Assembly (NCBI GenBank): GCA_977030845.1
Contig: OZ365112.1
Location: forward strand, 6,200,001 to 6,264,000
From: Fimbriosthenelais zetlandica
Lineage: Eukaryota
DNA: 64,000 bases
Direction: 5' to 3'
This document shows, one piece after another, positions 1 through 60,719 of the stretch. The notes under the pieces are model-generated. The model was not told the DNA's origin and ran no database searches. It saw only the letters and a program-made list of their open reading frames with translations. Made by a program: the position numbers and the translations under genes. Numbering within the stretch: the stretch's first letter is position 1; each line of letters starts with the position of its first letter.

Positions 1-90
1 ATCGTTTTAACTTAAAAGTTAATTTTGTGCGACTGAAAAAAATAACATTACATTGGAGAATCAAGTGAATGAGGATCGAGTGAAAGTAAA

Positions 91-96
91 ACTTAC
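91..96 (-). other. 5' splice donor (G|GTAAGT)
   Basis: Plus-strand ACTTAC at 91-96 is the consensus GTAAGT. It closes the 1248-nt exon in phase 1. Confidence 0.8.
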
Positions 97-1344
97 CATC
101 GGTGTAATAGTAGCTCCCATTTTCATCTTTTCTATCATCTTCCTCATCAAAATTATCATCTTCGTCATCGTACTCCTCCTGGGATATGCTGCTGTTAGAA
201 TACACATAGGAGACATTTCCCCACACGTCTAACCTCCCCGCCTCAGAACCCCCAGGCAAACTCTCATTGAAAGTTAAATTAGTCCTCCCCTCACTCAAAC
301 TCACATTTAAGTCTTTAGCCTTGCCGTAAAGTGTCTCCTCCACGACCCAGCCATGGTCGTGTGAGGTGGTGAAGTTTACACTAGGTGAAATATTTTGTTG
401 GCTTTGGGCTCCATCTTCTGCTAACATTTCTTCCCCTTCCCATTTCCCATCTCCCGGTTCCCCCTGTAATGAGGAGGAATTATGACTGGGGAGGAGCTCT
501 CTTCCCATCTCCCCCTCCTCCTCTTGCTCTCCCAATTTCCCGTCACCTTGGAAGTCTGTGGAGGAAGTGAGATTATTAGGTGAGGTAATTGTGTCATTTC
601 TGTGGTCTGTTTGCTCAGTAAAAATCTGTGATGACACATCCCCTTGGGAACTACCATTGTTACTATTCCTTCTGCTGTTCCCTCCCGTGTCCTCACTCCC
701 GTCCAGGGAGGAGGTTTTCAGGAGGGACTCCTCATCCCTAGCACTATGTATAGATGACCTATTCTCCCCTGATTTGGTGACATCCTGCTTTGCAATTATT
801 TGTGAACTCGACTGGTTAGCTTCAAGCTGACCCGTGTCACTAAGTAAAGCTTCTGTGTCATTACTCAAAAGAGAGAAGGTTTTCCCTTGAGGGGGAAGCT
901 TTGGCTGTTGGGACAATTTTAAAAGACTATCTTTTTCGATATGTTTGTTATGAATCTTGTGTGGTTTACTTAGTACTTTCTGCAAGGCATTCTTGACAAC
1001 GGTCTGGGTGGATAGGACTGGGGTGTGTGGCGACACACCAATGAGGTGGTGATGTGAAGAAGAGGACGATGATGAAGAAGTAAAAGACGAGGTGGTGTTT
1101 GTGATGGACTTCAAGTTTGATTGTTGGGCCACATCTGAAGTGTTAACTTTAGCTGGGGCGGAGTCTGTGGCTACGTGGCCGTGTGGTGGGAGGAGCCATG
1201 ATGGTGTAGGCGGTCTGTGGAGACTGCTGATAGTGGGGCCGGGGGTTGAACCATGGGTGAACAGGTGGTGAAGGGAGGAGGGTGACGTAGGTGTCACCTG
1301 ACCCTCCCTCCCAGCCGGCGTTGACTCTCCCCTCACTCTCCAAC
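97..1344 (-). CDS. Large internal coding exon (1248 nt, phase 1-1): Cys-free, S/T/P/G/E-rich, heavily N-glycosylated mucin/proteoglycan-like extracellular spacer; gene not recognised
   Basis: Manual translation: the minus frame has no stop from 1366 to the window edge at 1 (about 455 codons). The ORF track probably missed it because it has no in-window stop. Acceptor ...CTAATgcgatttttttaaattttCAG|GT at 1345/1344 and donor GATG|GTAAGT at 97/96. Length is divisible by 3. Peptide begins WRVRGESTPAGREGQVTPTSPSSLHHLF and ends SQEEYDDEDDNFDEEDDRKDENGSYYYTD. 17 of 25 Asn lie in N-x-S/T sequons. Confidence 0.85.
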
Positions 1345-1370
1345 CTGAAAATTTAAAAAAATCGCATTAG
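1345..1370 (-). other. 3' splice acceptor with branch point and polypyrimidine tract
   Basis: Minus strand CTAAT (1370-1366), then T-rich tract, then CAG ending at 1345. The upstream in-frame stop TAA (1369-1367) lies inside this intronic segment. Confidence 0.8.
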
Positions 1371-1502
1371 AAATTGATGCTAACCTTATTAATCGTTGGG
1401 CAAATGGCTTCAACTTCCCATCCACAAAGCAGGCTCAATGACCAAATTCCTGTCAGTCTATTAATCGATTTTGTTCTTTATCCAAGGAAGTGTAGCAACC
1501 AG

Positions 1503-1552
1503 GAGCCCATTTCAAAACAAAAATTAGTCAATTTTTCTTTTGAAATAGGCCC
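1503..1552 (-). mobile_element. Tiny hairpin MITE, family 1 copy 1 (PIF/Harbinger-like), internally deleted
   Basis: Arms including flanks (1500-1525 and 1530-1555) match 22/26 as an inverted repeat. Flanked by CAG...CAG direct repeats. Homologous to 5194-5260 in inverted orientation. Confidence 0.6.
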
Positions 1553-4500
1553 CAGATTTCAGCGCAATTTCTCTTTTGTTCCCTGACAAGTTACTCTGTT
1601 ATGGTTCAAGAAAATGGATGTCAATCCATATTGGATTTGGCATTCTTTTGTTGTATTTCTAGCGTGCTTTACTGTAAGGTGCATGGAGTGGAAATTTTGC
1701 TAATTACCAAGAGACAAGGCATTGGTATTGGGTTGCTACTTGAGATAAGACGCAAGAAATCGATTGAGCAGAGTTCCTTGAGTGAAGACAATCGAACCCT
1801 AGGAATGAAACATGGGAACACTCGCCTTCAGAAATGGTTCAGATTTCAGAGCTGAAGTTCCTATTTAGGCAATGTCAAGAAAAGAAGGCTAGATACAATA
1901 CCGCCTTATCATGTGTCATCCAACAAGCCATGGAACGTGGGAAAGAAAAACAGAATCCTTCTGTGTTGGATCATTCACATAGAGGTACAGATACGGCTTT
2001 CCCATGCATGGTGTACCTCAATCCATCATAAAACCTGTATACCTGCTAATGTCCTCAGGGTACAACCCTTCTTTCCTGAGTGCTTTCATACTCAACTTTT
2101 CCTGTTAGTTCTCGTCTAGAAAGAGATGTATTACATTCTACGAAAAACAACTACTTCTACGTGGATTAAAAACTATTAATCCTTAACTAATGCAGTCCTA
2201 CGAATGACACGTATTATGTACTTAAAACAGACCCATGTATCACCATCTCTGAGAGGAGTGCTTCCCACATAACCCATATTATATAGGCACTGTGGCCTGA
2301 AGGACTTAAACAATCCTATTTCATGACATAAACATTATGATGGTGTTCACTATCTATAGCTAATTATAGTGCGCATCAATATAACAAAGGGCACCTGGGG
2401 ATGTAGATAAGGGAATATAATCAGGGAAGTTGAGAGGATGAACAGGAAAAACTAAAAGAACACGAAGAAGTAACGAAATGAGCTAAGACCATACATACTA
2501 AGCAAAACAGAGGACCTCTTAGAACAGGCTCTATCTCCGAGATCGATGTCCCAACAATACATACCGTCAATGCAGCACAACAGTCAACTACACTGCTTGA
2601 CAGAAACCAATGAATAATCTTCCGGCTGGATACACCTATGACGTCTGTGGGGCATTATATGGATGGTTTCAGCCCAAGATTAGGCGGCTTGGCCCCTTCC
2701 TGTGCCTTCAGGAAGAGGCCCTCGGCAAAGAGGGGGAGAGAAAGAGAGAACAAGAAGGAGCAATTCCAATAGGTGCCTAGGCATGCACATATAGTGAAAG
2801 AAGTGAATGGTTTGCTATTTGTGTCCTTTCTTCGATAACGTTGCATATATGAGAAAAAGAGAGGAGGAGGCAATATGAGAGTGTATATAGAGCTTAAGTT
2901 GCAGCAATAATCACTCTCCTCAATATTATTCCACTTACCAAATAAACACATCAGTGTACCCGGTACTTCACAGAGAGGGCAATGACCGACACTTGCTTTT
3001 GTACTTTGAGAAATAATTTGCTTGAGTCAAATCTGTTACATAAATAACTCATGGTCTTGGTGAAGGACGGTATATTAGTGGGGCTTACATTTGTCACCCA
3101 TTCTGTTATTAATTAAAGAATTATTCATTTCGCATGACAGTTGCATAATTTATGACATCATTTGTTACGCAATAATGAATTCCGTGTACTAAAGCTATCC
3201 TTCATGTATTCATATCAAGTGATTCCATCACAGAGATAGCTGTACACAACTACTGCCCTACATCTATCACCATAATCACTAGACCAGAGCAAGACATGAG
3301 AATGAGAAAGTCAAGGGAATGAGAAAGGCACCATTTTGTGTTAAAATACAATTAGCCTGGCGGCGATATGTCTAGATTATACATAATAAAGCATGGCTGG
3401 ATAAGGAAGAGGTGTCAGATATGGCTATACATAGACAGTGCCATGTCTCATCGGGCCTTCACCCCAAGTGGGTAAATCCCAAGGATCTCATATTTTTCAA
3501 ATTTGACTCCAATCAGTCTCTTACCGAGTTGTATATTATGTTCAATGTGTATTGCATTTTACCTTTAACCCAAGGTATATCATCCATCGCTGAAGATCAA
3601 ACCGTCAATAACAGTGGAGAGGGTTTAGCATATACATGCAGCTCTAATACTGCACTGTTTGTGGGGAGATAAGTAGAGGATTTCACATTTATAAACACAG
3701 ATATCTATCAAAAAATGAGCTTTTACTTCAGAGGGAAATGGAATAGATCCAAGATTTTACCCTATATATGTATATAAAGTGAATGTAATTTAAGTGCTGA
3801 GGCTTATCGCATAGATATCACAGAAAGAAGCAGTGGGGGTCTTCATCTCCTGGGATGAAATGAAATGACGATTATTGTGTGGAGCCCAAAGGAGGAGGAC
3901 AGTGCTCATGCCAGGGCAAAAACGAAGCATATATGAGTAAATGAATTGCCTCCAGCTAGAATAAAACCTTTCACGGTGTGGAACATCACGAAGCAATATC
4001 AGCCAAATCCTGCACCTCATATATCAAGTAATCACATATTACGTCTGGCGATCAGCTCCCAGCCTGGTCTTAATTAATTATATTATATTAAGGCCTTAAT
4101 GAAAAGCTGCGGGTTCTGCGAAGGAAAGGCAGGGGTGAAGCCATTATATCACTGATAGCTATTTTGAATTAACTCGTATGATAGTAATGACATTATGAGG
4201 CTTTATACGAATGGGAATTATGAGTAATATTAATCCTGGTTATGAAATAAAGTCGATCTCATTTCATAACCGTCCCATTCCTGATCTAAAATGAAGTTCT
4301 TTCAAAATATCCATATAATAGGTTTCATTATTGGTATTCAACCCACAGTCCCATCCAAGCCCTCACTGACAGGATTCTGGATGATTCTAGAGCACCCACA
4401 CTATAGGACTCACAGATATTGAGTGTTACTTGTATGAGAGGGCATCAAAGCTCAAGTGAAGAGCTGGGCCTATGACTCAGCTTCAGCCTGTAAAGTAGTA

Positions 4501-30114: not shown

Positions 30115-31739
30115 CAGGATACCTGCATTATATAGAAGCAACCAACCCATACACTTCTGTCTTCATCATTATAGGTGTAAGTGGAGTCCTTCGCTCCGTC
30201 ATACACCCCAGTAACTCAAAGAAAATTCATTCCAGGAGAAACCTTTACCAAGCTTGAGCACCTTCTGGAGTGGAGCTGATGGTTTAGAAAGGGGTCGGGT
30301 GGAGTGGTTGCATTGGCATAATGAGAAGTAGAGCTCGATCGATAGTCATCGTAATAAGAGGCTCAATATCGAGACATTTGGGCTTGTTGAGAAGAAGGCA
30401 AGAGGAGGTGGGGGGAAGAGCATCAAGGTAATAGATATAAAAGTGCCACGAGAAAAGATGGGAGAATTTAAATATGAATATACTACCATTGCGGGTATGT
30501 CCCCAGCAGCAGTCTTAAGCTATACGTATATATTCCTCTATGGGGGATGATGGGTGTTGTCCATAAATTTCAGGGACCGAGGCACAGACGGGAAAACTCA
30601 AGACGCAATTTAGAGATTGGTCTTTTTAGGCGGGACGCGGAAAGACAAATCACCGACAGGTAAATACAATCGCTTATCGCTCAGTCTCAAAAAACATTAT
30701 TTCAGCCAAGTGATCCGGACCAGCATTACGACGTATTTACGCTATGTATAGTACCTCCTGTCTTTACCCAACCAAGCTTCTCCCACCCCTACAAACACCC
30801 AGACGCCATCCGAGATGTTGTCTCACTCAAAACAATGGAGTAAAGTAGATGGATGGGGAAGCTGGACAGAGTCTGATGCACTGTAAAAGAATCTCCATGG
30901 ATTAAAAAAGCAGAATTAAAAAAGTTTAATCCCCACTGGAATTGACCTTCATTATTCCATATTGGAAAAATAAACCATATTGCTCCATTGATAAAATAGT
31001 CTATTTTAATGAAGGAAGTTGGTATATTATTTGTAAGGATGTTTTAACAGTGCAGGGAGAGGCTGGCTTGCTGCAGTGAGTTCCAATACAGAATAAGCAT
31101 CATCAACTTGTCATGCTCATGTTCACATATTAAAGGGATCTTAATAACAAAAGGCATCCATGAGCCGCCATCACAAGTCGAGATGAACATGGCCTAGCCG
31201 GCTGGCGCGGTATTAATTCACAGCCACCCATTCACATGCAGATCATTATCTCTTCTTACCTGGACTTGCCATTTTACAGCTCCCTTGGCTGCTTCCCAAC
31301 CTTCTAAATCTCTGCTCAACTTGAGGATTCAATCCTCCAAATCATCCCTCCATTCCCGGACTTTTAGGGGAAGTTGGAGCAGAGGAAGCACAGGGCTTTC
31401 CTCTTATTTCAAATGTCAATCTCCATTCTCATCTTCCAGCAGAGATCAGGGAATCCTCAAGCCATTTTGCCCTCTAAATCCCCTCTCAACTCGTGGATCC
31501 TAGGAGGATGCAGGATCGGGCTGATGTGGGGTTTTGCTCAGAATCCAGTCGAGATTATGCCGACTGTAGTTTTAACAAAACTTTTATGTTTAAAAACTAT
31601 AAAATCAACCGAGGTTTTGTCATCGCAATCACCCGATACTGTCCATAAACTTTACTTTTCTGTGGAAATATTTCTGGTCTCGTTTGGGCCCTCTGCCTGG
31701 CCCATTCAAAAGCCATCCACACTTCTTCAACCCATATTT

Positions 31740-32340
31740 TCATTATCCCGCCCGGGAGCCATTTCCATACAAACATAAAGGGGTATTTTACTACCCATCT
31801 TCCACAGTCGCACCCAGGAATCGCCTTCTCTGCCTACTCGCCGACCTCCTTCACCCTTACTTTCCATGCCTCTCCTCCTCCATTGCTTTCTCTACTTCTT
31901 TGCTCTCCGGGGACCATCACCAATGCCTCCGCTTGCATTTATGGCAATATAGTTTCTTCTGCCTACTCAACCCCAAAACCCGAACCTTCTGTTGGCACAC
32001 AATCGCCCTCTCATTCCCTCAGGCGCATTTTCCAGAGGCTGTTATAATCTCATCCCATGGAGGCCCCACCTCCTTCAACCCAAACACATTGCCCTTTCTC
32101 ACTTCCAACAAACCTCTCTTCCATCTCTAGCCCTTTATTCTATCCAGCTGCGCCTCTCCGCCACTTCTGTTTTATCTCAGTGGGAACCATATTTAACACC
32201 AAAGCTCCAGATGTACAATATTTACCACACTTCTCTCCATTTCTCCCTCTGCTTTCATTGTTTTCTCATATTTTATGCTCATTTCATTTCGTTATTTACG
32301 TATTCTCCCACATTAAACACTTTCCCCTTGTTCCTCTTGA
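31740..32340 (+). repeat. Pyrimidine (C/T)-rich low-complexity tract, possibly a decayed L2-type LINE segment
   Basis: Strong C/T skew over about 600 bp. Faint SRGCYNL...LSH...SIQ similarity to the L2 SRLDYCN...LSHLSPLQSI region. Confidence 0.4.
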
Positions 32341-35300
32341 TAAGGATCTCATATATTCGATCATGAGAGCTTTTGGCTACAAAATCACCGGCCAACAGTT
32401 TGAAAGGAGCATATCCATCACAAAGATTACAGGGACTGTCAAATCCGGAAAATATGCGATTATAAGGGAGCAAGGCAAGCAGAACAAAATATGGATGAAA
32501 TCATGCAGGGATAGGGTAAATCACTTGTATCTGTGGCCCCGTATCAGGCCTTTCACTATAGGAGACACCTGTATAATTTATTGCTATGAATAAATCAGTC
32601 CTTTCAACAATTCTGTATCATAATTTCAATTGATCTTGAAGGAAGATCTTCCCACTGACTTGCTCACAATACAATAGGAATGGAATTCTACGTAATCAGA
32701 AAAATGTACATGCAGGCAGTTCCAAACCAGACTTCCATTCGGAAGTGAGATTTTGTCTCTGTCCAGGGATTTTGTTTTATTATGGAAGGAGGGAATGTCG
32801 TGCTTAATCTTCCTAAATTGCATATTCAGGACCAATATGACTCTCAAATCCATTCATCAGCTGTATTTATGACTCTGCTTAATTGTTTTCGATTTTGTTA
32901 GGAAGCGCGAACCTGGTGAAAAATTGGGTGATTTATCTGCCCTCTAAATCCTCTGGAACAAATAATTAACATTGGTAGCTCGTGGAATGTGTTTGCTAAC
33001 AAATCTCACTTCTGTGTCTCATTTTCCCAAGCTTCAATGACTTAAGAGCATGTACTGCCACACCTTAAATTATTCCATCCTTTTCAGAGGAAGAAAACAC
33101 GGGATTATGCAGGAGAGGCGGGGTACGGTACCACAAGTACCAGCTGAATGAGAACCATGTCAATCACTCAACCTCCGATCACTACTCAGTGCTGGATAGA
33201 TGCAGGATTTAGACCAGCCAAATAGGTCCTCTTTCCCTACCGTTCCTGCACTGGTTTCAAATAATCTCTCAATAACTAGGGAGTTTATATAGAATGATCT
33301 TCAATTCAAAGATTGATTAAGTCACTGCTATGCACCCAATATGGATAGAAATTGCTATAGATTTTATATATTTTATACCCTGTTAGTAAACTCCAACCTT
33401 TTTGCCGTGCTCTATAGCCCTTCACTAAATCCTATACATCACTCTGTTGGCGTGCACTCTTGTACCGTATAGTGCACGGGAATTGTAGGCAGAAATAAAT
33501 GTCTGCATTGCAAACAATTCAAACAGAATTCCTTACACCAAATGCAGGCATCTTACCACTGAGCCAGAGGCAGCTATTCCAGTAGTATCCTAGGCGAATA
33601 ACAAACGAAGGCTATACAACACAGAGTCACATACAAGATGGATAATTCATTTTTTCCACCGTTGTGTACATCATCATATCCATCATTGTATTCAGGATTT
33701 AATTGATTTACTATTCGTCTGGTGTATACAAAACAGGAGAGCAAATTTGATATGGCTCCTTCTCTATCCACTTACTCCACTCTGTTTCATATCTGTATGA
33801 TTTTGAAGATGAAGATAAAAGGATAAGTCCAGGGGAAGTGTATACCCCTGGTGAAGCGTCCTCCTTCATTAGATACTGGCCTTTTGTTTTGGGATTTGGA
33901 AGCCACTTGTATCGACTATGGAGTCATTACAAATACAAGCATTTTCTCATCTGATATATGGGATGGGAGTAATGCAGCACTGCATTGAAGTTTTCCCAGC
34001 AGTTTCAATTCAGGGAAGTGACATTGTAGTCATCCATCATGCACACTCGGTGGAAGCTAGATTTGTATCTACAGACCACATACTTGGTATTTTGATGGGA
34101 CACGTACCCATAGGTGGCAGATGCCTTCCCACTTACATCCAGCAACACTTTGATAATGAAATTTAATAAGTGTCCATACTCGCTGAGATGTAAATACAAC
34201 TGCACATACCAAGCTGAGAATCCAGTCTCGGGGGGTCAATAATCCACTTGCTTCCACCAAGTAGGACTGGTGGTACTTGCAGGCATTACGTTCGCTGGGA
34301 GAAAGCAGGCACATCTATGATTTATAGCTGGCATGGTCACGTAGCAATATTAAGGAACAGTTGCCGGGCCCCGCGAGTGTCATTCCCCAAGCAGATACCA
34401 AATGATGGGCCCTGCAGAAGTTGACGAGTACCCACGAGGGACATGATCACGAGTTTTGTTAAGTGCACGTGGAAAATGAGTTCCGGCCCAGTGTTGACCC
34501 AGACTTTGTTATGTAAGCAAGGTGGGAAGGAAACAACATCCGAGGTGGACGGGTAATGCATGATAGCACAGGGCCTGGAAGGACACGAGGAATAACACTG
34601 TATAAAAAATTTACTGGGAAGGGATGGAGGAATGTATTGATTCCATGTCCCATCCTATGGAGAGCAGATCTAGATGTAACTGCTTAAGTCTACATTTCCA
34701 TCCCTCTCCACTTTCCATCTTGTTTTTCATTTTCTTGTATCAATCTAAAGCAGTCCTTTACCTCGAATACCCTGTCTCTCCCATTCTCTCAGCTTTTCTT
34801 TCCTCACGCACATGAATCTCACGCCTGAGCAGCGAGTGAGGTGTTATTTCAACCTCTCTCTATCAATCTTATTCATAATAGATGTAAAGCCTCTTTTAAT
34901 ATACCTGTGAATACCTCGGTTCACTCTGACCCCACCTCACATCTGCCTTTCACGAGGGTTTCAACTCCTCACCAGCAAATTCCCCCGAGACCTTCCAGGT
35001 CATGACCCCAGAACAAGAGAGGAAAACAGTTGAAGGCCAAGGTACTTTCATGGAGGCTGGCCAGACTGAAGGTGTGTTCTCTGGCCTGGAGGAATAGCTC
35101 CACAACACCTGGCTGCCTCCACAGAAGGTGGCCATCCACTCGCACAGGCATAATGGACTCAAAGTATGCCATTTACATCCTTGGGATAAGAGGCTGCGGG
35201 GTGAATTTTACAACTTTGTCTACAGATACTTCAATGTGAAGCTTGAAACAGGTTTAAACTGTTATCACATGACATAATCTCTGGAAATCTACGACTTCCA

Positions 35301-57700: not shown

Positions 57701-58201
57701 TTCCAGCAAATTAGTTTCAGACGAACAATGATCCATAAAAAAGGTGACTTAATAAGTCGGAAATGAGCCTGTGGACAGGCAGAAAACCAAGTAATTGCTG
57801 AAGATGCTACCTTCATTCAAAGGATATGAAAGATGATGCAGTAGCTATAGTTCCTAAAATTCTGATGCAATGGCGAACAACAATGATTGGGAAATGAGTC
57901 GGGACCCTCACAAAAGAGATCAGAAACTGTCAGTCATCCCATGGTCTTTGAAGTGTCTATACTGTCATATTCCTCTGAGCAGATATGCAATATGAATTCA
58001 TCAGCCAGATTATCTTGCTTCTCTTGAGTTGTACAGTACAAAGCTTCATATCAGCGGCTCGTACAATCTGTCGGTTGTTTAGGTGAAGTATGTTGAAGTG
58101 TTGGAGCACACCAAGCGTGAAATAGAGATGAAACAAGGCTGATGATGTGGCCCATCAAACACTTCCAGAATAACTTTATAGTCTTATGAATATATAGTTT
58201 A

Positions 58202-58396
58202 ATGGAGGAGATGAATTATTTACTAATGAGCAAAATCATGTTGATAGGAGATTTTAACCTAGATGAACATAGTAGGCCTAAACGTAAGGACATAGGTTTT
58301 TTCTCTCGAAATATATTACCTGAATTAGATGTTGGTCTGGGGCTCACTTTAGGTGAAAAAACGTGCTTGGGAGTTAGAAGGGGGGATTTGGTTTGA
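58202..58396 (+). pseudogene. Apurinic-like endonuclease (APE) domain fragment of a non-LTR retrotransposon
   Basis: KIMLIGDFNL motif, followed about 45 aa later by T..G...DLV. This fits the GDFN...PT..G..LDLV spacing of LINE endonucleases. Bounded by stops. Confidence 0.5.
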
Positions 58397-58401
58397 AAGA
58401 G

Positions 58402-58480
58402 AAAAATTATGACCTTGTTGGGATTCGAACCCATGTTCTTGTACTACTCTAAATGGCACCTTACAATATACAAGTAATTA
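58402..58480 (-). pseudogene. tRNA-derived fragment (intact T-arm/B-box, degenerate 5' half)
   Basis: Minus strand GGGTTCGAATCCC (58432-58420), followed by aacaaggtca and a T5 run. Confidence 0.5.
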
Positions 58481-58507
58481 AGGGAGTTAGAATAAATAAG
58501 CAGTTGG

Positions 58508-58606
58508 AAAAAAAGCGAAAACGCGGAACATGGCAGGAATCGAAGCTAGTTTGACATGCCCCTCGTATTGAGAGTTCATCTCTTTAACCATTCGGCCACT
58601 GACTGC
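58508..58606 (-). pseudogene. tRNA-Ser/Leu-type pseudogene
   Basis: A-box TGGCCGAATGGTTAA (58598-58584), B-box-like GCTTCGATTCC (58546-58536), downstream T4 and T7 runs. Anticodon and T stems do not pair. Confidence 0.55.
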
Positions 58607-58805
58607 TTGGATCTGTTGGTGTTCAACAAATTGTGGTACATGAGAAGCGACGGTGAAAAGGAAAATATATTTAATATCAATTCATAATTTAAAACTTTTA
58701 AAAACTACCGAATGTATCAGCTGAATGTGTCTGGTCAGTAGAATAATCAACCTCCGTGGTTGGGGAGGTTCTGGAAATATTACCATTTGGTTTACTACCT
58801 CTAAC

Positions 58806-58894
58806 GGCTGTTCTCGTTGGCCCAGTGGTCAAGGGCGCTGGTAGTCTGATGTAAGTTTTAACAGACTCGTGGGTTCGAATCCCCACAACAGCCA
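58806..58894 (+). pseudogene. tRNA-Leu-like pseudogene/derivative
   Basis: 7-bp acceptor stem GGCTGTT/AACAGCC plus A, A-box TGGCCCAGTGG, T-arm GTGGG-TTCGAAT-CCCCAC (one extra C). No canonical anticodon arm; an AGTCTG/CAGACT stem with a 13-nt loop instead. Confidence 0.6.
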
Positions 58895-59300
58895 TGGTAG
58901 TGGTCCCGTCTGTAAGTTTCAAGTGAAAGACTGGTGAAGTCTCCCACGTTCTGATCATAGCTTGATTTGCGTGGGCCCGCGTTCAATCCGTAAAGGTGGA
59001 ACACTTGCACTGATCATATGTGTGTACGGCCATGGAGCAATTCGCCACAGTGATCAGTTGGTTATCAAGTGTGTAGCCTTGCCAGGGTTGATATGCCAGG
59101 GTGAATGGATCCGGTTGACTAAGACTAACTCACCAAAAAAAAAATTTATTTATATTTTAAACTTAAATTTTGTTTGGAGGGTGTAAGATGACAGATGGGA
59201 AATAGTGGTAGAAATATTTAATAACGCTACGAATAGGGTGATGGGTATTGGAAATTACTGAGGTGAGTGTGTGTGTGGTGGGGGCAGGTATGTAGGTATG

Positions 59301-59510
59301 GAAATATTTTTATGAAACATGCCCCAAACACAGAAAGAGATATGGTGATGGTGCAAGTGATAGTTGTAGTTAAAATGTCCCCAAAAGGGTGACAGATAAT
59401 ATTCTGAAATATTTTATGAAAATTGCCCCAAATAAGAGTATGCGAGAAATTAGTAAATTATTGAAAATATTTTATGAAACAAACCCCAATTAGAAAGGAG
59501 ATGATGAGGT
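59301..59510 (+). repeat. Degenerate minisatellite with a period of about 50-57 bp
   Basis: Core GAAATATTTT(T)ATGAAA-(4-5 nt)-CCCCAA at 59301, 59406 and 59463, plus a partial AAAATGTCCCCAAAA at about 59372. Confidence 0.65.
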
Positions 59511-59760
59511 TCGGAGGGGATGAGACACAGGGTTAGGGACAGAGGGGAGAGATGGCTGGAGGAAAGGGAAATGGTGTGCTCGGGAGAATATAAGAGACAG
59601 TGGAGAACATGGGGGATGGGAGAGATGGTATAGGAGAAGGTATAAGGGAGGGTGAGGGTGGTATAGTGAATGGGACAGTGGCTAAGTAAGACAGGGTGAC
59701 TGGGAGAACTCAGAGAAGGGCATGAGAGAATTCAAAGAGCAGATTATTATAGGAATGATT
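59490..59760 (+). repeat. G/A-rich low-complexity tract
   Basis: Purine-skewed run (gggagggatgagacacagggttagggacagaggggagaga...). Confidence 0.6.
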
Positions 59761-60719
59761 GGAAGCAGGAGGAAAAGGATGGAGATGGTGAGTCCCCTGT
59801 TAGAAATTTTACATAGTGATGGAAATGAAATGTGTTTAATTGTAGCACATGCTTGTACTTGCCCAAGCACTAAAACTAATGTAGTGATCGATGATGAAGT
59901 TTGCTAGCCTCCATCCAACAATATGTCACCCGTTTTCATTAAATGAGTTTAAAGTCGTAAAGGTGAGATATAAGTGGCTTGTACACAGTGCTTTCAGGCC
60001 AATAGCATCGAATGGCCCTGTGCGACTTTAGACTCGCTTACAGAAAACACCTCAAAAATGCAAGAAGCAAAGGAGCTGATTTGGCTGGACGGACCTCCCC
60101 TCGCTGACCAACCGTCAAAAGCCTTGCGAATTTTGCCTGTTTTGTATCGAGAAAGGTATCAAACACCTACCGACTGTAAAGCTAGGGACCTAGGGTAAGG
60201 CTAGCCAAAAGGCGGTCTCAAGGTTCTTGCAAGGGAGAGACCTGGGATCTGGTAGACTATAGTTCTTCCAGAACGAGAAGTTAACTTCTCATTCTGGAAG
60301 TAATAAATGACTAGGTGGATGAGAGCCCCGGGCTGAGCAGCAATAGTAAGATCACTTCATTAGAATGAATTTAATTCATGCATTCTTCTTCAATTATTCA
60401 TGGTACATCAACTCAAGATGACTGTTGACAAGTCAAGGGTACATCTTCGTTATGACATTGACTTTACCTTTAAATGATGGGAGTTACGGTAATGTCAAAG
60501 TCACCTATATATAGAAGGGCTGACTATAGAGCCTGAAATAAATGCTGTCTATAGGGCACTTAGGTATTATCCCACTCAATTTGTCAAGGGGGTCTCATCT
60601 TGCCCCGTGGATGTATAGGGCATGCCCACTGTGCAGTAGATATATATTGCCTAGATGGCCCTAGAGAAATGGTTAACCTAATGATATTGCATTGGCACGT
60701 ACCACTGGGTGCTCTTTGG

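What the first reader, a model, noticed from the sequence alone, without database searches (positions are those of the whole stretch)
97..1344. Hidden 1.25-kb symmetric coding exon missed by the ORF track
Seen: about 455 stop-free codons on the minus strand, canonical acceptor and donor, phase 1 at both ends, and no Cys. Known: large phase 1-1 Cys-free spacer exons are typical of modular extracellular proteins (e.g. lectican GAG exons) and can be skipped without a frameshift. Inference: a possibly alternatively spliced spacer of a secreted or membrane glycoprotein that I cannot identify.
Basis: partly seen in the sequence, partly recalled or inferred. Interest (0 to 1): 0.8.

Follow-up and report, generated by a model that had tools for sequence, protein, structure and literature searches.

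The report
Glycosylated ectodomain exon of membrane protein
The stretch is a real protein-coding exon that most likely encodes almost the whole floppy, sugar-coated outer part of a single-pass membrane protein of unknown name; this is ordinary gene structure, and the ORF list missed it only because the frame runs off the window edge.

Summary
The minus strand is open for 455 codons in the window (459 in all). The exon at 1344..97 has a tttcag|GT acceptor and a G|gtaagt donor, is phase 1 at both ends, and has no Cys. It is coding. A second species keeps the frame, both splice sites and 52% amino-acid identity, with dN/dS 0.33 and only in-frame indels, and DNA similarity stops at the exon ends. 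There are 17 NxS/T sequons against 5.8 expected, and 12 are conserved in place. AlphaFold gives pLDDT 33, which fits disorder.

No lectican-type or other Pfam domain exon was found on this strand across about 100 kb. Phase-compatible exons lie downstream: a 72-nt acidic Tyr-rich exon, a TM exon conserved in two more species, and short tails with an ExxxLL motif. A candidate signal-peptide exon lies 75 kb upstream, head-to-head with zgrf1.

Best reading: this is the main ectodomain exon of a domain-less type I membrane N-glycoprotein, not a spacer in a modular matrix protein. Alternative splicing is untested because no RNA runs were listed. The gene's name is unknown, and the protein libraries used seem to lack annotated fish proteins. 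The scan had already noted the tail exons (s1-196153). Interest is low to moderate.

The parts
97..1344 (-). Coding exon of 1248 nt, phase 1-1. It encodes 415 full codons of a Cys-free, Ser/Thr/Asn/acidic-rich, disordered, N-glycosylated ectodomain. It ends in an acidic Tyr-rich box (EEYDDEDDNFDEEDD...GSYYYTD).
   Evidence: open frame, composition, 17 sequons; ortholog with 52% identity, dN/dS 0.33, 12 sequons conserved in place; pLDDT 33
1345..1366 (-). 3' splice site: T-rich tract followed by tttcag|. The open frame reaches only 7 codons into the intron.
   Evidence: The same TTTGCAG|GTTGGAGAGTGAGG junction is present in the other species' contig L012.
88..96 (-). 5' splice site, |gtaagtttt, directly after ...ACC GAT G.
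   Evidence: An identical G|GTAAGTT follows ...SYYYTD in L012. DNA similarity ends at window 90.
2..96 (-). Intron read-through part of the open frame (GKFYFHSILIH...). It is not coding. The stop lies just outside the window, at about -11.
   Evidence: There is no similarity to L012 beyond the donor.

Best explanation
Window 1344..97 (minus strand) is a constitutive-looking internal coding exon. It carries nearly the entire extracellular part of a domain-less type I membrane N-glycoprotein. The inferred gene model on the minus strand, in window coordinates, has five parts. (1) A candidate first exon at 76748..76673 (locus L017) has a good Kozak ATG and encodes a signal-peptide-like MACDERLNPTTILLFIGVLSSQIGR. 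It ends in phase 1 at GAG|GTAAGT and sits head-to-head with zgrf1. (2) This exon. (3) A 72-nt phase 1-1 exon at -22101..-22172 encodes D-SDQRSGAKSDWIYDEDYDEEDYD. (4) A transmembrane exon at -37664..-37806, phase 1-0, encodes ...SHDASLSILVFYTWIGIVTVMVIGAFIALKHRHR. (5) One of two neighbouring terminal exons encodes a short cytoplasmic tail of 32 or 45 aa with an EEGxNLL motif of the [DE]xxxL[LI] type. Shown: the exon is coding, is under purifying selection and keeps its splice sites. It is enriched in conserved N-glycosylation sequons, Cys-free and predicted disordered. The TM and tail exons are conserved in other species. Inferred: all these exons belong to one transcript. The ectodomain is a heavily N-glycosylated extended stalk. 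The acidic Tyr clusters next to the membrane are tyrosine-sulfated. The tail motif drives clathrin-adaptor-dependent endocytic or endosomal sorting.
For: The open frame is a statistical outlier. There is no in-frame ATG near its start (only two internal Met), so it needs an upstream exon. Ortholog ORFs P0001 and P0002, on genomic contigs of another species, cover the whole exon. They share 52% identity, and all 53 gapped residues are in-frame. dS is about 1.1 and dN/dS is 0.33, falling to 0.2 at both ends. The acceptor and donor are identical, and there is no similarity in the flanking introns. There are 17 NxS/T sequons against 5.8 +/- 2.1 in 2000 composition-preserving shuffles, none of which reached 17. 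Twelve sit in the same aligned column in the ortholog. AlphaFold2 gives mean pLDDT 33 and pTM 0.15. Downstream exons have matching phases and consensus splice sites. The TM exon is 72-77% identical in two further species, and similarity ends exactly at KHRHR|gt. On contig L028 a tail exon, IANYVWDARTGYRKETVFATEEGRNLLTHQQV*, follows the TM exon by 2.2 kb on the same strand. No Pfam domain exon was found anywhere on this strand between -38 kb and +64 kb. The candidate exon 1 is.
Against: There is no transcript evidence at all, because no sequencing run was listed. The joins between exons therefore rest on strand, order, phase and consensus sites. Exon 1 is unverified: its hydrophobic core is only about 8-10 residues and it lies 75 kb away. 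The Pfam scans only covered open stretches of at least 42-45 aa, so small exons (for example EGF-sized or cytokine-fold exons) could have been missed. The 72-nt exon has no cross-species support. Disorder was predicted from a 3-sequence alignment. Sulfation, glycosylation and sorting are inferred from motifs only.
Confidence: 0.72

Rival explanations
1. One reading: an alternatively spliced, skippable spacer exon between folded modules of a lectican-, PTPRZ- or proteoglycan-type extracellular protein.
For: It is a large Cys-free phase 1-1 exon, and skipping it would keep the frame (G|AT of the next exon).
Against: Per-member Pfam scans of 579 open stretches on this strand over about 100 kb gave no Xlink, Lectin_C, EGF, Sushi, fn3, Ig, carbonic-anhydrase or phosphatase exon, only chance-level hits. 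There is one SG dipeptide only. The neighbouring exons encode an acidic box, a TM helix and a short tail.
Confidence: 0.06
2. The exon is coding but belongs to a different transcript from the TM and tail exons 38 kb downstream. For example, it could belong to a secreted acidic glycoprotein whose remaining small exons were missed.
For: The exon joins are inferred, not observed. Introns of 22 and 15 kb leave room for undetected small exons or a gene boundary.
Against: Phases match at every proposed junction (1-1, 1-1, 1-0, 0). The 72-nt exon continues the same acidic Tyr-rich theme. No other coding signal was found in between. The exon ends at a strong donor, so something must follow it.
Confidence: 0.15
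3. A chance open frame, a transposon ORF or a decaying pseudogene.
For: No Pfam, Atlas or named protein match.
Against: The chance expectation is about 1e-8 per window. The sequence is single-copy in the genome. The frame is kept across dS of about 1.1 with in-frame indels and dN/dS 0.33. Splice sites and glycosylation sequons are conserved.
Confidence: 0.02

Closest known systems
Domain-less mucin-like type I membrane glycoproteins (for example PARM1, endomucin, the CD164/CD34-podocalyxin group, TMEM108). This comparison is from my own knowledge.
   Same: The layout is shared: a signal-peptide exon ending in phase 1, a very long first intron, one large exon encoding a Cys-free disordered glycosylated ectodomain, then a small exon or exons, a single TM segment and a short sorting tail.
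   Different: Here the glycosylation signature is N-linked sequons (17 in 415 aa) rather than Pro/Thr/Ser O-glycan repeats. There is no match to the PARM model (PF17061) or to any other Pfam family. The tail and TM sequences resemble none that I can name.
   Same: A large, Cys-free, phase 1-1 exon that could be skipped in frame.
   Different: There are no flanking link-module, EGF, C-type lectin or Sushi exons. There is one SG site. A TM exon and a cytoplasmic tail follow instead.
PMEL/GPNMB-type cytoplasmic tail (from my own knowledge: ...ENSPLLSGQQV in human PMEL, a dileucine endocytic signal plus a C-terminal Val)
   Same: The tail ends in ExxxLL-[ST]-x-Q-x-V-stop. It reads EEGQNLLTHQHV* here and EEGRNLLTHQQV* in L028.
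   Different: No PKD or kringle-like domain exon was found. The ectodomain is unrelated. The resemblance covers about 11 residues and may be convergent.
Acidic sulfotyrosine boxes of GPIb-alpha, PSGL-1 and factor VIII a3 (from my own knowledge)
   Same: Clusters of Tyr embedded in Asp/Glu (EEYDDEDD, GSYYYTDD, DWIYDEDYDEEDYD) match the usual context for tyrosine sulfation.
   Different: This is only a motif-level resemblance. Sulfation is untested and the surrounding proteins are unrelated.

Membership tests
Lectican GAG-attachment exon | Link-module (Xlink) exons upstream in the same gene | tested here: not met
   No Xlink hit among 258 minus-strand open stretches from 1.5 to 64 kb upstream.
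Lectican GAG-attachment exon | EGF, C-type lectin and Sushi exons downstream | tested here: not met
   No such hit among 210 open stretches from 0 to -38 kb. A TM exon and tails were found instead.
Lectican GAG-attachment exon | Many Ser-Gly GAG attachment sites | tested here: not met
   One SG in 415 residues.
Lectican GAG-attachment exon | Large Cys-free phase 1-1 exon | tested here: met
Mucin-like type I membrane glycoprotein (generic kind) | N-terminal signal peptide | tested here: inconclusive
   There is only a candidate exon at 76748..76673 with a Kozak ATG, a hydrophobic core and a phase-1 consensus donor. It has no transcript or cross-species support.
Mucin-like type I membrane glycoprotein (generic kind) | Long disordered, heavily glycosylated, Cys-poor ectodomain | tested here: met
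   17 sequons against 5.8 expected, 12 conserved in place, 0 Cys, 24.6% Ser+Thr, pLDDT 33. Actual glycosylation was not assayed.
Mucin-like type I membrane glycoprotein (generic kind) | Single TM helix followed by a short cytoplasmic tail, in the same transcript | tested here: inconclusive
   TM and tail exons exist, are conserved, and are linked to each other on L028. Their link to this exon rests on phase and order only.
PARM1 family (Pfam PF17061) | Match to the PARM profile | tested here: not met
   hmmscan of all exons gave no hit at E up to 10. The genome-wide family search found nothing, and it also rang in no control genome, so that search is weak.
PMEL/GPNMB family | PKD and kringle-like domains in the lumenal part | tested here: not met
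   No PKD or KLD hit in any scanned stretch.
Syndecans | Conserved C1-V-C2 tail ending in EFYA, and SG clusters | tested here: not met
   The tails read ...EEGRNLLTTVM* and ...EEGQNLLTHQHV*. There was no Syndecan Pfam hit.

The most novel reading that the evidence does not exclude
This is a lineage-restricted, fast-evolving, so far uncharacterised type I membrane N-glycoprotein with no detectable domain or paralog. It is transcribed divergently from zgrf1. Its membrane-proximal sulfotyrosine-type acidic box acts as a binding platform. Its cytoplasmic tail exon has been duplicated in this lineage into two alternative ends. One keeps a terminal Val (...HQHV, as in the other species' ...HQQV) and one has lost it (...TTVM), which would give two isoforms with different ER-export or sorting behaviour.
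Probability: 0.25. Interest if true: 0.45.

Novelty: new member of a known kind. Interest (0 to 1): 0.27.

Why it matters
The main value is a clean resolution. The 'hidden exon' is real, but it is ordinary eukaryotic gene structure, and the ORF list missed it because of a window-edge rule. The work also shows that a stop-free stretch with conserved splice sites, in-frame indels and conserved NxS/T sequons can be validated as coding without any RNA data. If the gene proves to be unannotated or uncharacterised, it adds a domain-less neuronal-style gene (introns of 15-75 kb in a 447-Mb genome) for a glycosylated, probably tyrosine-sulfated surface protein with an adaptor-binding tail. That would be worth a tagged-expression and knockout look, but it would not change current concepts.

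Tried and rejected
- **Searches with the exon itself.** Pfam gave nothing. The ESM Atlas gave no usable hit. The 1.84-billion representative library gave only P0001, an unnamed ORF on a genomic contig, and the 5.8-billion library gave the same.
- **Why 'no named homolog' is not evidence of novelty.** The neighbouring zgrf1 giant exon also hit only an unnamed Logan ORF. These libraries therefore seem to lack annotated fish proteomes.
- **RNA evidence.** Both sequencing-run runs listed no run, so read laying could not be used.
- **Paralogs.** Searches of the window's own genome with the exon, the TM exon and tail B found none.
- **Families considered and dropped.** These were PARM1 (recalled GWRV at the exon 1/2 join; one search found nothing), FXYD (no FxYD before the TM in any of the three species), and CSF1/KITLG, PMEL/GPNMB, CD44, syndecan, CSPG5 and PTPRZ/G (no matching domain exon or tail).
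- **Signal-peptide exon inside the window.** The scan found nothing convincing.
- **Synteny.** The right neighbour is zgrf1. No LARP7 La motif, which is its human head-to-head partner by my recollection, occurs in the 174 kb read. The 20 kb left of the tails gave only a chance-level CARME hit. Synteny did not name the gene.
- **Other checks.** There is no CpG island and no tandem repeat in the exon.

Full report
**Observation**

On the minus strand the frame starting at window 1366 is free of stops down to position 2, which is 455 codons. With the left flank fetched from the genome it ends at -10, which is 459 codons. The window is G000:C13:6200001-6264000 in a 447-Mb genome of 79 contigs.

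No other open stretch in the window exceeds 181 codons. With the window's own stop frequency (0.058 per codon), the expected number of stretches of at least 455 codons is about 1e-8.

Counting from the frame, the exon begins with two bases of a codon and ends with one, so it is phase 1 at both ends. It is 1248 nt long with 415 full codons and no Cys.

The ORF list missed it for a mechanical reason. The ORF listing does not report ORFs that run off the source, and this frame runs off the window start. In locus L001, which contains all of it, the ORF is listed.

**Is it coding?**

Yes. The only hit in a scan of 1.84 billion representative proteins was P0001, at E 2e-62 and 52% identity over residues 3-415. 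P0001 and its near-identical cluster mate P0002 are ORFs on 1.7-1.8-kb Logan contigs that include intron flanks, so they are genomic DNA of another species.

That contig has the same acceptor (TTTGCAG|GTTGGAGAGTGAGG) and the same end (...SYYYTD G|GTAAGTT). blastn similarity runs from window 1361 to 90 and no further.

In a codon alignment all indels are in frame (53 gapped residues). dS is about 1.1 and dN/dS is 0.33, falling to about 0.2 in the first 60 and the last 100 aligned codons.

The exon has only two internal Met and no ATG near its start, so it cannot be a stand-alone ORF. It is single-copy in the genome.

**What it encodes**

- The composition is 16% Ser, 8% Thr and 6% Asn, with a net charge of -28.
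- There are 17 NxS/T sequons against 5.8 +/- 2.1 in 2000 shuffles, and none of the shuffles reached 17.
- The ortholog has 15 sequons, and 12 of them sit in the same aligned column despite 52% identity.
- There is only one SG dipeptide, so this is not a GAG-attachment region.
- AlphaFold2 on the 3-sequence alignment gives mean pLDDT 33 and pTM 0.15, with no residue at or above pLDDT 70. This is compatible with intrinsic disorder, with the caveat of a shallow alignment.
- The best-conserved parts are the first ~110 residues (WRVRGESTPA...HRPPTPSWLLPP, about 60-67% identity per 30-residue block) and the last ~85 residues (53-64%). The end is an acidic Tyr-rich box, EEYDD(E/D)...GSYYYTD.
- Conserved N-glycosylation sequons are a signature of a lumenal or extracellular segment. 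That link comes from established knowledge, not from an assay here.

**Surroundings**

I translated every minus-strand open stretch of at least 45 aa from 1.5 to 64 kb upstream (258 stretches), and of at least 42 aa from 0 to -38 kb downstream (210 stretches). Each was scanned on its own against Pfam. Only isolated hits at E 0.002-0.009 to irrelevant families appeared, about what chance gives. So there are no link-module, EGF, lectin, Sushi, Ig, fn3, PKD or phosphatase exons. Exons with shorter open stretches could still have escaped.

A splice-site scan plus reading the sequence by eye found three kinds of downstream exon with matching phase:

- **Acidic exon.** A 72-nt exon at -22101..-22172 is bounded by ttttacag|AT...GAT G|gtagga and is phase 1-1. 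It reads D-SDQRSGAKSDWIYDEDYDEEDYD and continues the acidic Tyr theme.
- **TM exon.** A 143-nt exon at -37664..-37806 (L013:2336-2194) is bounded by cgtcag|GT GAA...AGA|gtgagt and is phase 1-0. It encodes G-ETMEMHQPFVPESSHDASLSILVFYTWIGIVTVMVIGAFIALKHRHR, a clear TM helix with a basic stop-transfer end.
- **Tail exons.** Two phase-0 terminal exons lie 113 nt apart, at L013:1081-983 and L013:870-733. Tail A reads IANYVWDARTGYRKKGTVCATEEGRNLLTTVM*. Tail B reads ILKALERFRAAGYYRRRRAVSATRTVLATRFAMEEGQNLLTHQHV*. These are the tails an earlier first-stage note described (s1-196153).

The TM exon is conserved in two further species. P0004, on an ENA metagenome contig, is 77% identical over the exon, and P0005, on Logan contig L028, is 72% identical. 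In both, similarity stops exactly at KHRHR, where the donor lies.

On L028 a single tail exon lies 2.2 kb downstream on the same strand and reads IANYVWDARTGYRKETVFATEEGRNLLTHQQV*. It is 90% identical to tail A at its start, and it ends like tail B. There is no second tail within the remaining 1.1 kb of the contig. The TM-plus-tail unit is therefore real and conserved. The duplication into two tails seems specific to the window's lineage.

**Upstream**

No convincing signal-peptide exon exists inside the window. Beyond it, at 76748..76673 (L017), there is an ATG in a GCCAACATGG context. It is followed by MACDERLNPTTILLFIGVLSSQIGR and a perfect GAG|GTAAGT donor in phase 1. Joined to this exon it would read ...IGR-G-WRVRGE....

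The plus-strand gene that starts there is zgrf1. Its Pfam hits are ZGRF1-like_N at 6e-8 and Zn_ribbon_GRF at 1e-8, and it has giant exons at 90138-95057 and 103085-104998.

This first exon is a reasonable candidate, but it is unverified.

**Mechanism**

Shown: this is a coding, selected, sequon-rich, Cys-free, probably disordered exon, with conserved TM and tail exons downstream.

Inferred: the exons form one transcript for a protein of about 560 aa, made of a signal peptide, a ~440-aa glycosylated ectodomain, a TM helix and a 37-50-aa tail. The exon would supply about three quarters of the protein as an extended N-glycan-bearing stalk. The Tyr residues embedded in Asp/Glu next to the membrane fit the usual context for tyrosine sulfation. 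EEGxNLL fits the [DE]xxxL[LI] adaptor-binding consensus. The motif readings rest on general knowledge and were not tested.

**Comparison with known kinds**

It works like the domain-less mucin-type single-pass glycoproteins (PARM1, endomucin and the like), and it shares their gene layout. It matches none of their profiles.

It is not a lectican-type spacer, because three of the four defining features tested were not met.

The last 11 residues of the tail resemble my recollection of the PMEL tail (ExxxLL...QQV). The PMEL lumenal domains are absent.

The gene's name remains unknown. The large protein libraries returned only unnamed ORFs from stray genomic contigs, for this gene and also for zgrf1. 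The lack of a named homolog therefore says nothing about novelty. No paralog exists in the genome.

**What could not be done**

No sequencing run was listed for the exon. Splice junctions, expression and the proposed exon skipping are therefore untested.

**Verdict**

The 'hidden' status is an artefact of the ORF list. The lectican-like 'spacer' reading is not supported. The exon is most likely the main ectodomain exon of an ordinary, if unnamed, membrane glycoprotein gene.

Noticed in passing
L017-L020, about window 77000 to beyond 105000, + strand: The neighbouring gene is zgrf1. Pfam hits are ZGRF1-like_N at 6e-8 and Zn_ribbon_GRF at 1e-8. It has two giant open exons of 1640 and 638 codons at window 90138-95057 and 103085-104998, and the second contains an (HSLSNN)n-like repeat. 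An ORF from another species (P0003) matches the first at E 2e-241. The gene appears to start head-to-head with the candidate first exon of the gene studied here.
   Followed up: partly
L013:1081-983 and L013:870-733 (window -38919..-39017 and -39130..-39267), minus strand: Two alternative terminal tail exons lie 113 nt apart. The related species' contig L028 has only one, a hybrid in sequence: it starts like tail A and ends ...THQQV like tail B. Tail A here has lost the terminal Val (...TTVM). This looks like a lineage-specific exon duplication.
   Followed up: partly
window 1494-1560: A ~60-bp element just upstream of the exon, in the intron, has at least 45 copies at 72-97% identity on many contigs and both strands. 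It is probably a short interspersed or MITE-like repeat.
   Followed up: no
L014, about window -44500 to -47400: Identical peptides recur at a spacing of 2252 bp (for example -44506/-46758 and -45095/-47347). This indicates a perfect tandem duplication of about 2.25 kb downstream of the gene, or an assembly artefact.
   Followed up: no
window 31200-32600, + strand: A pyrimidine-rich, low-complexity stretch gives several overlapping open frames of 130-180 codons in all three + frames (Ser/Pro/Leu-rich). GC skew is -0.13 in that bin. It is probably not coding.
   Followed up: no
window 58001-60000: There is a strong local GC skew of +0.30, and this is the only 1-kb bin with CpG observed/expected above 0.7. 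No tandem repeat was reported there.
   Followed up: no
L014/L015 (window -60000..-40000): A single open stretch hit Pfam CARME (carnosine N-methyltransferase) at E 0.004. With 88 stretches scanned this is at chance level.
   Followed up: no
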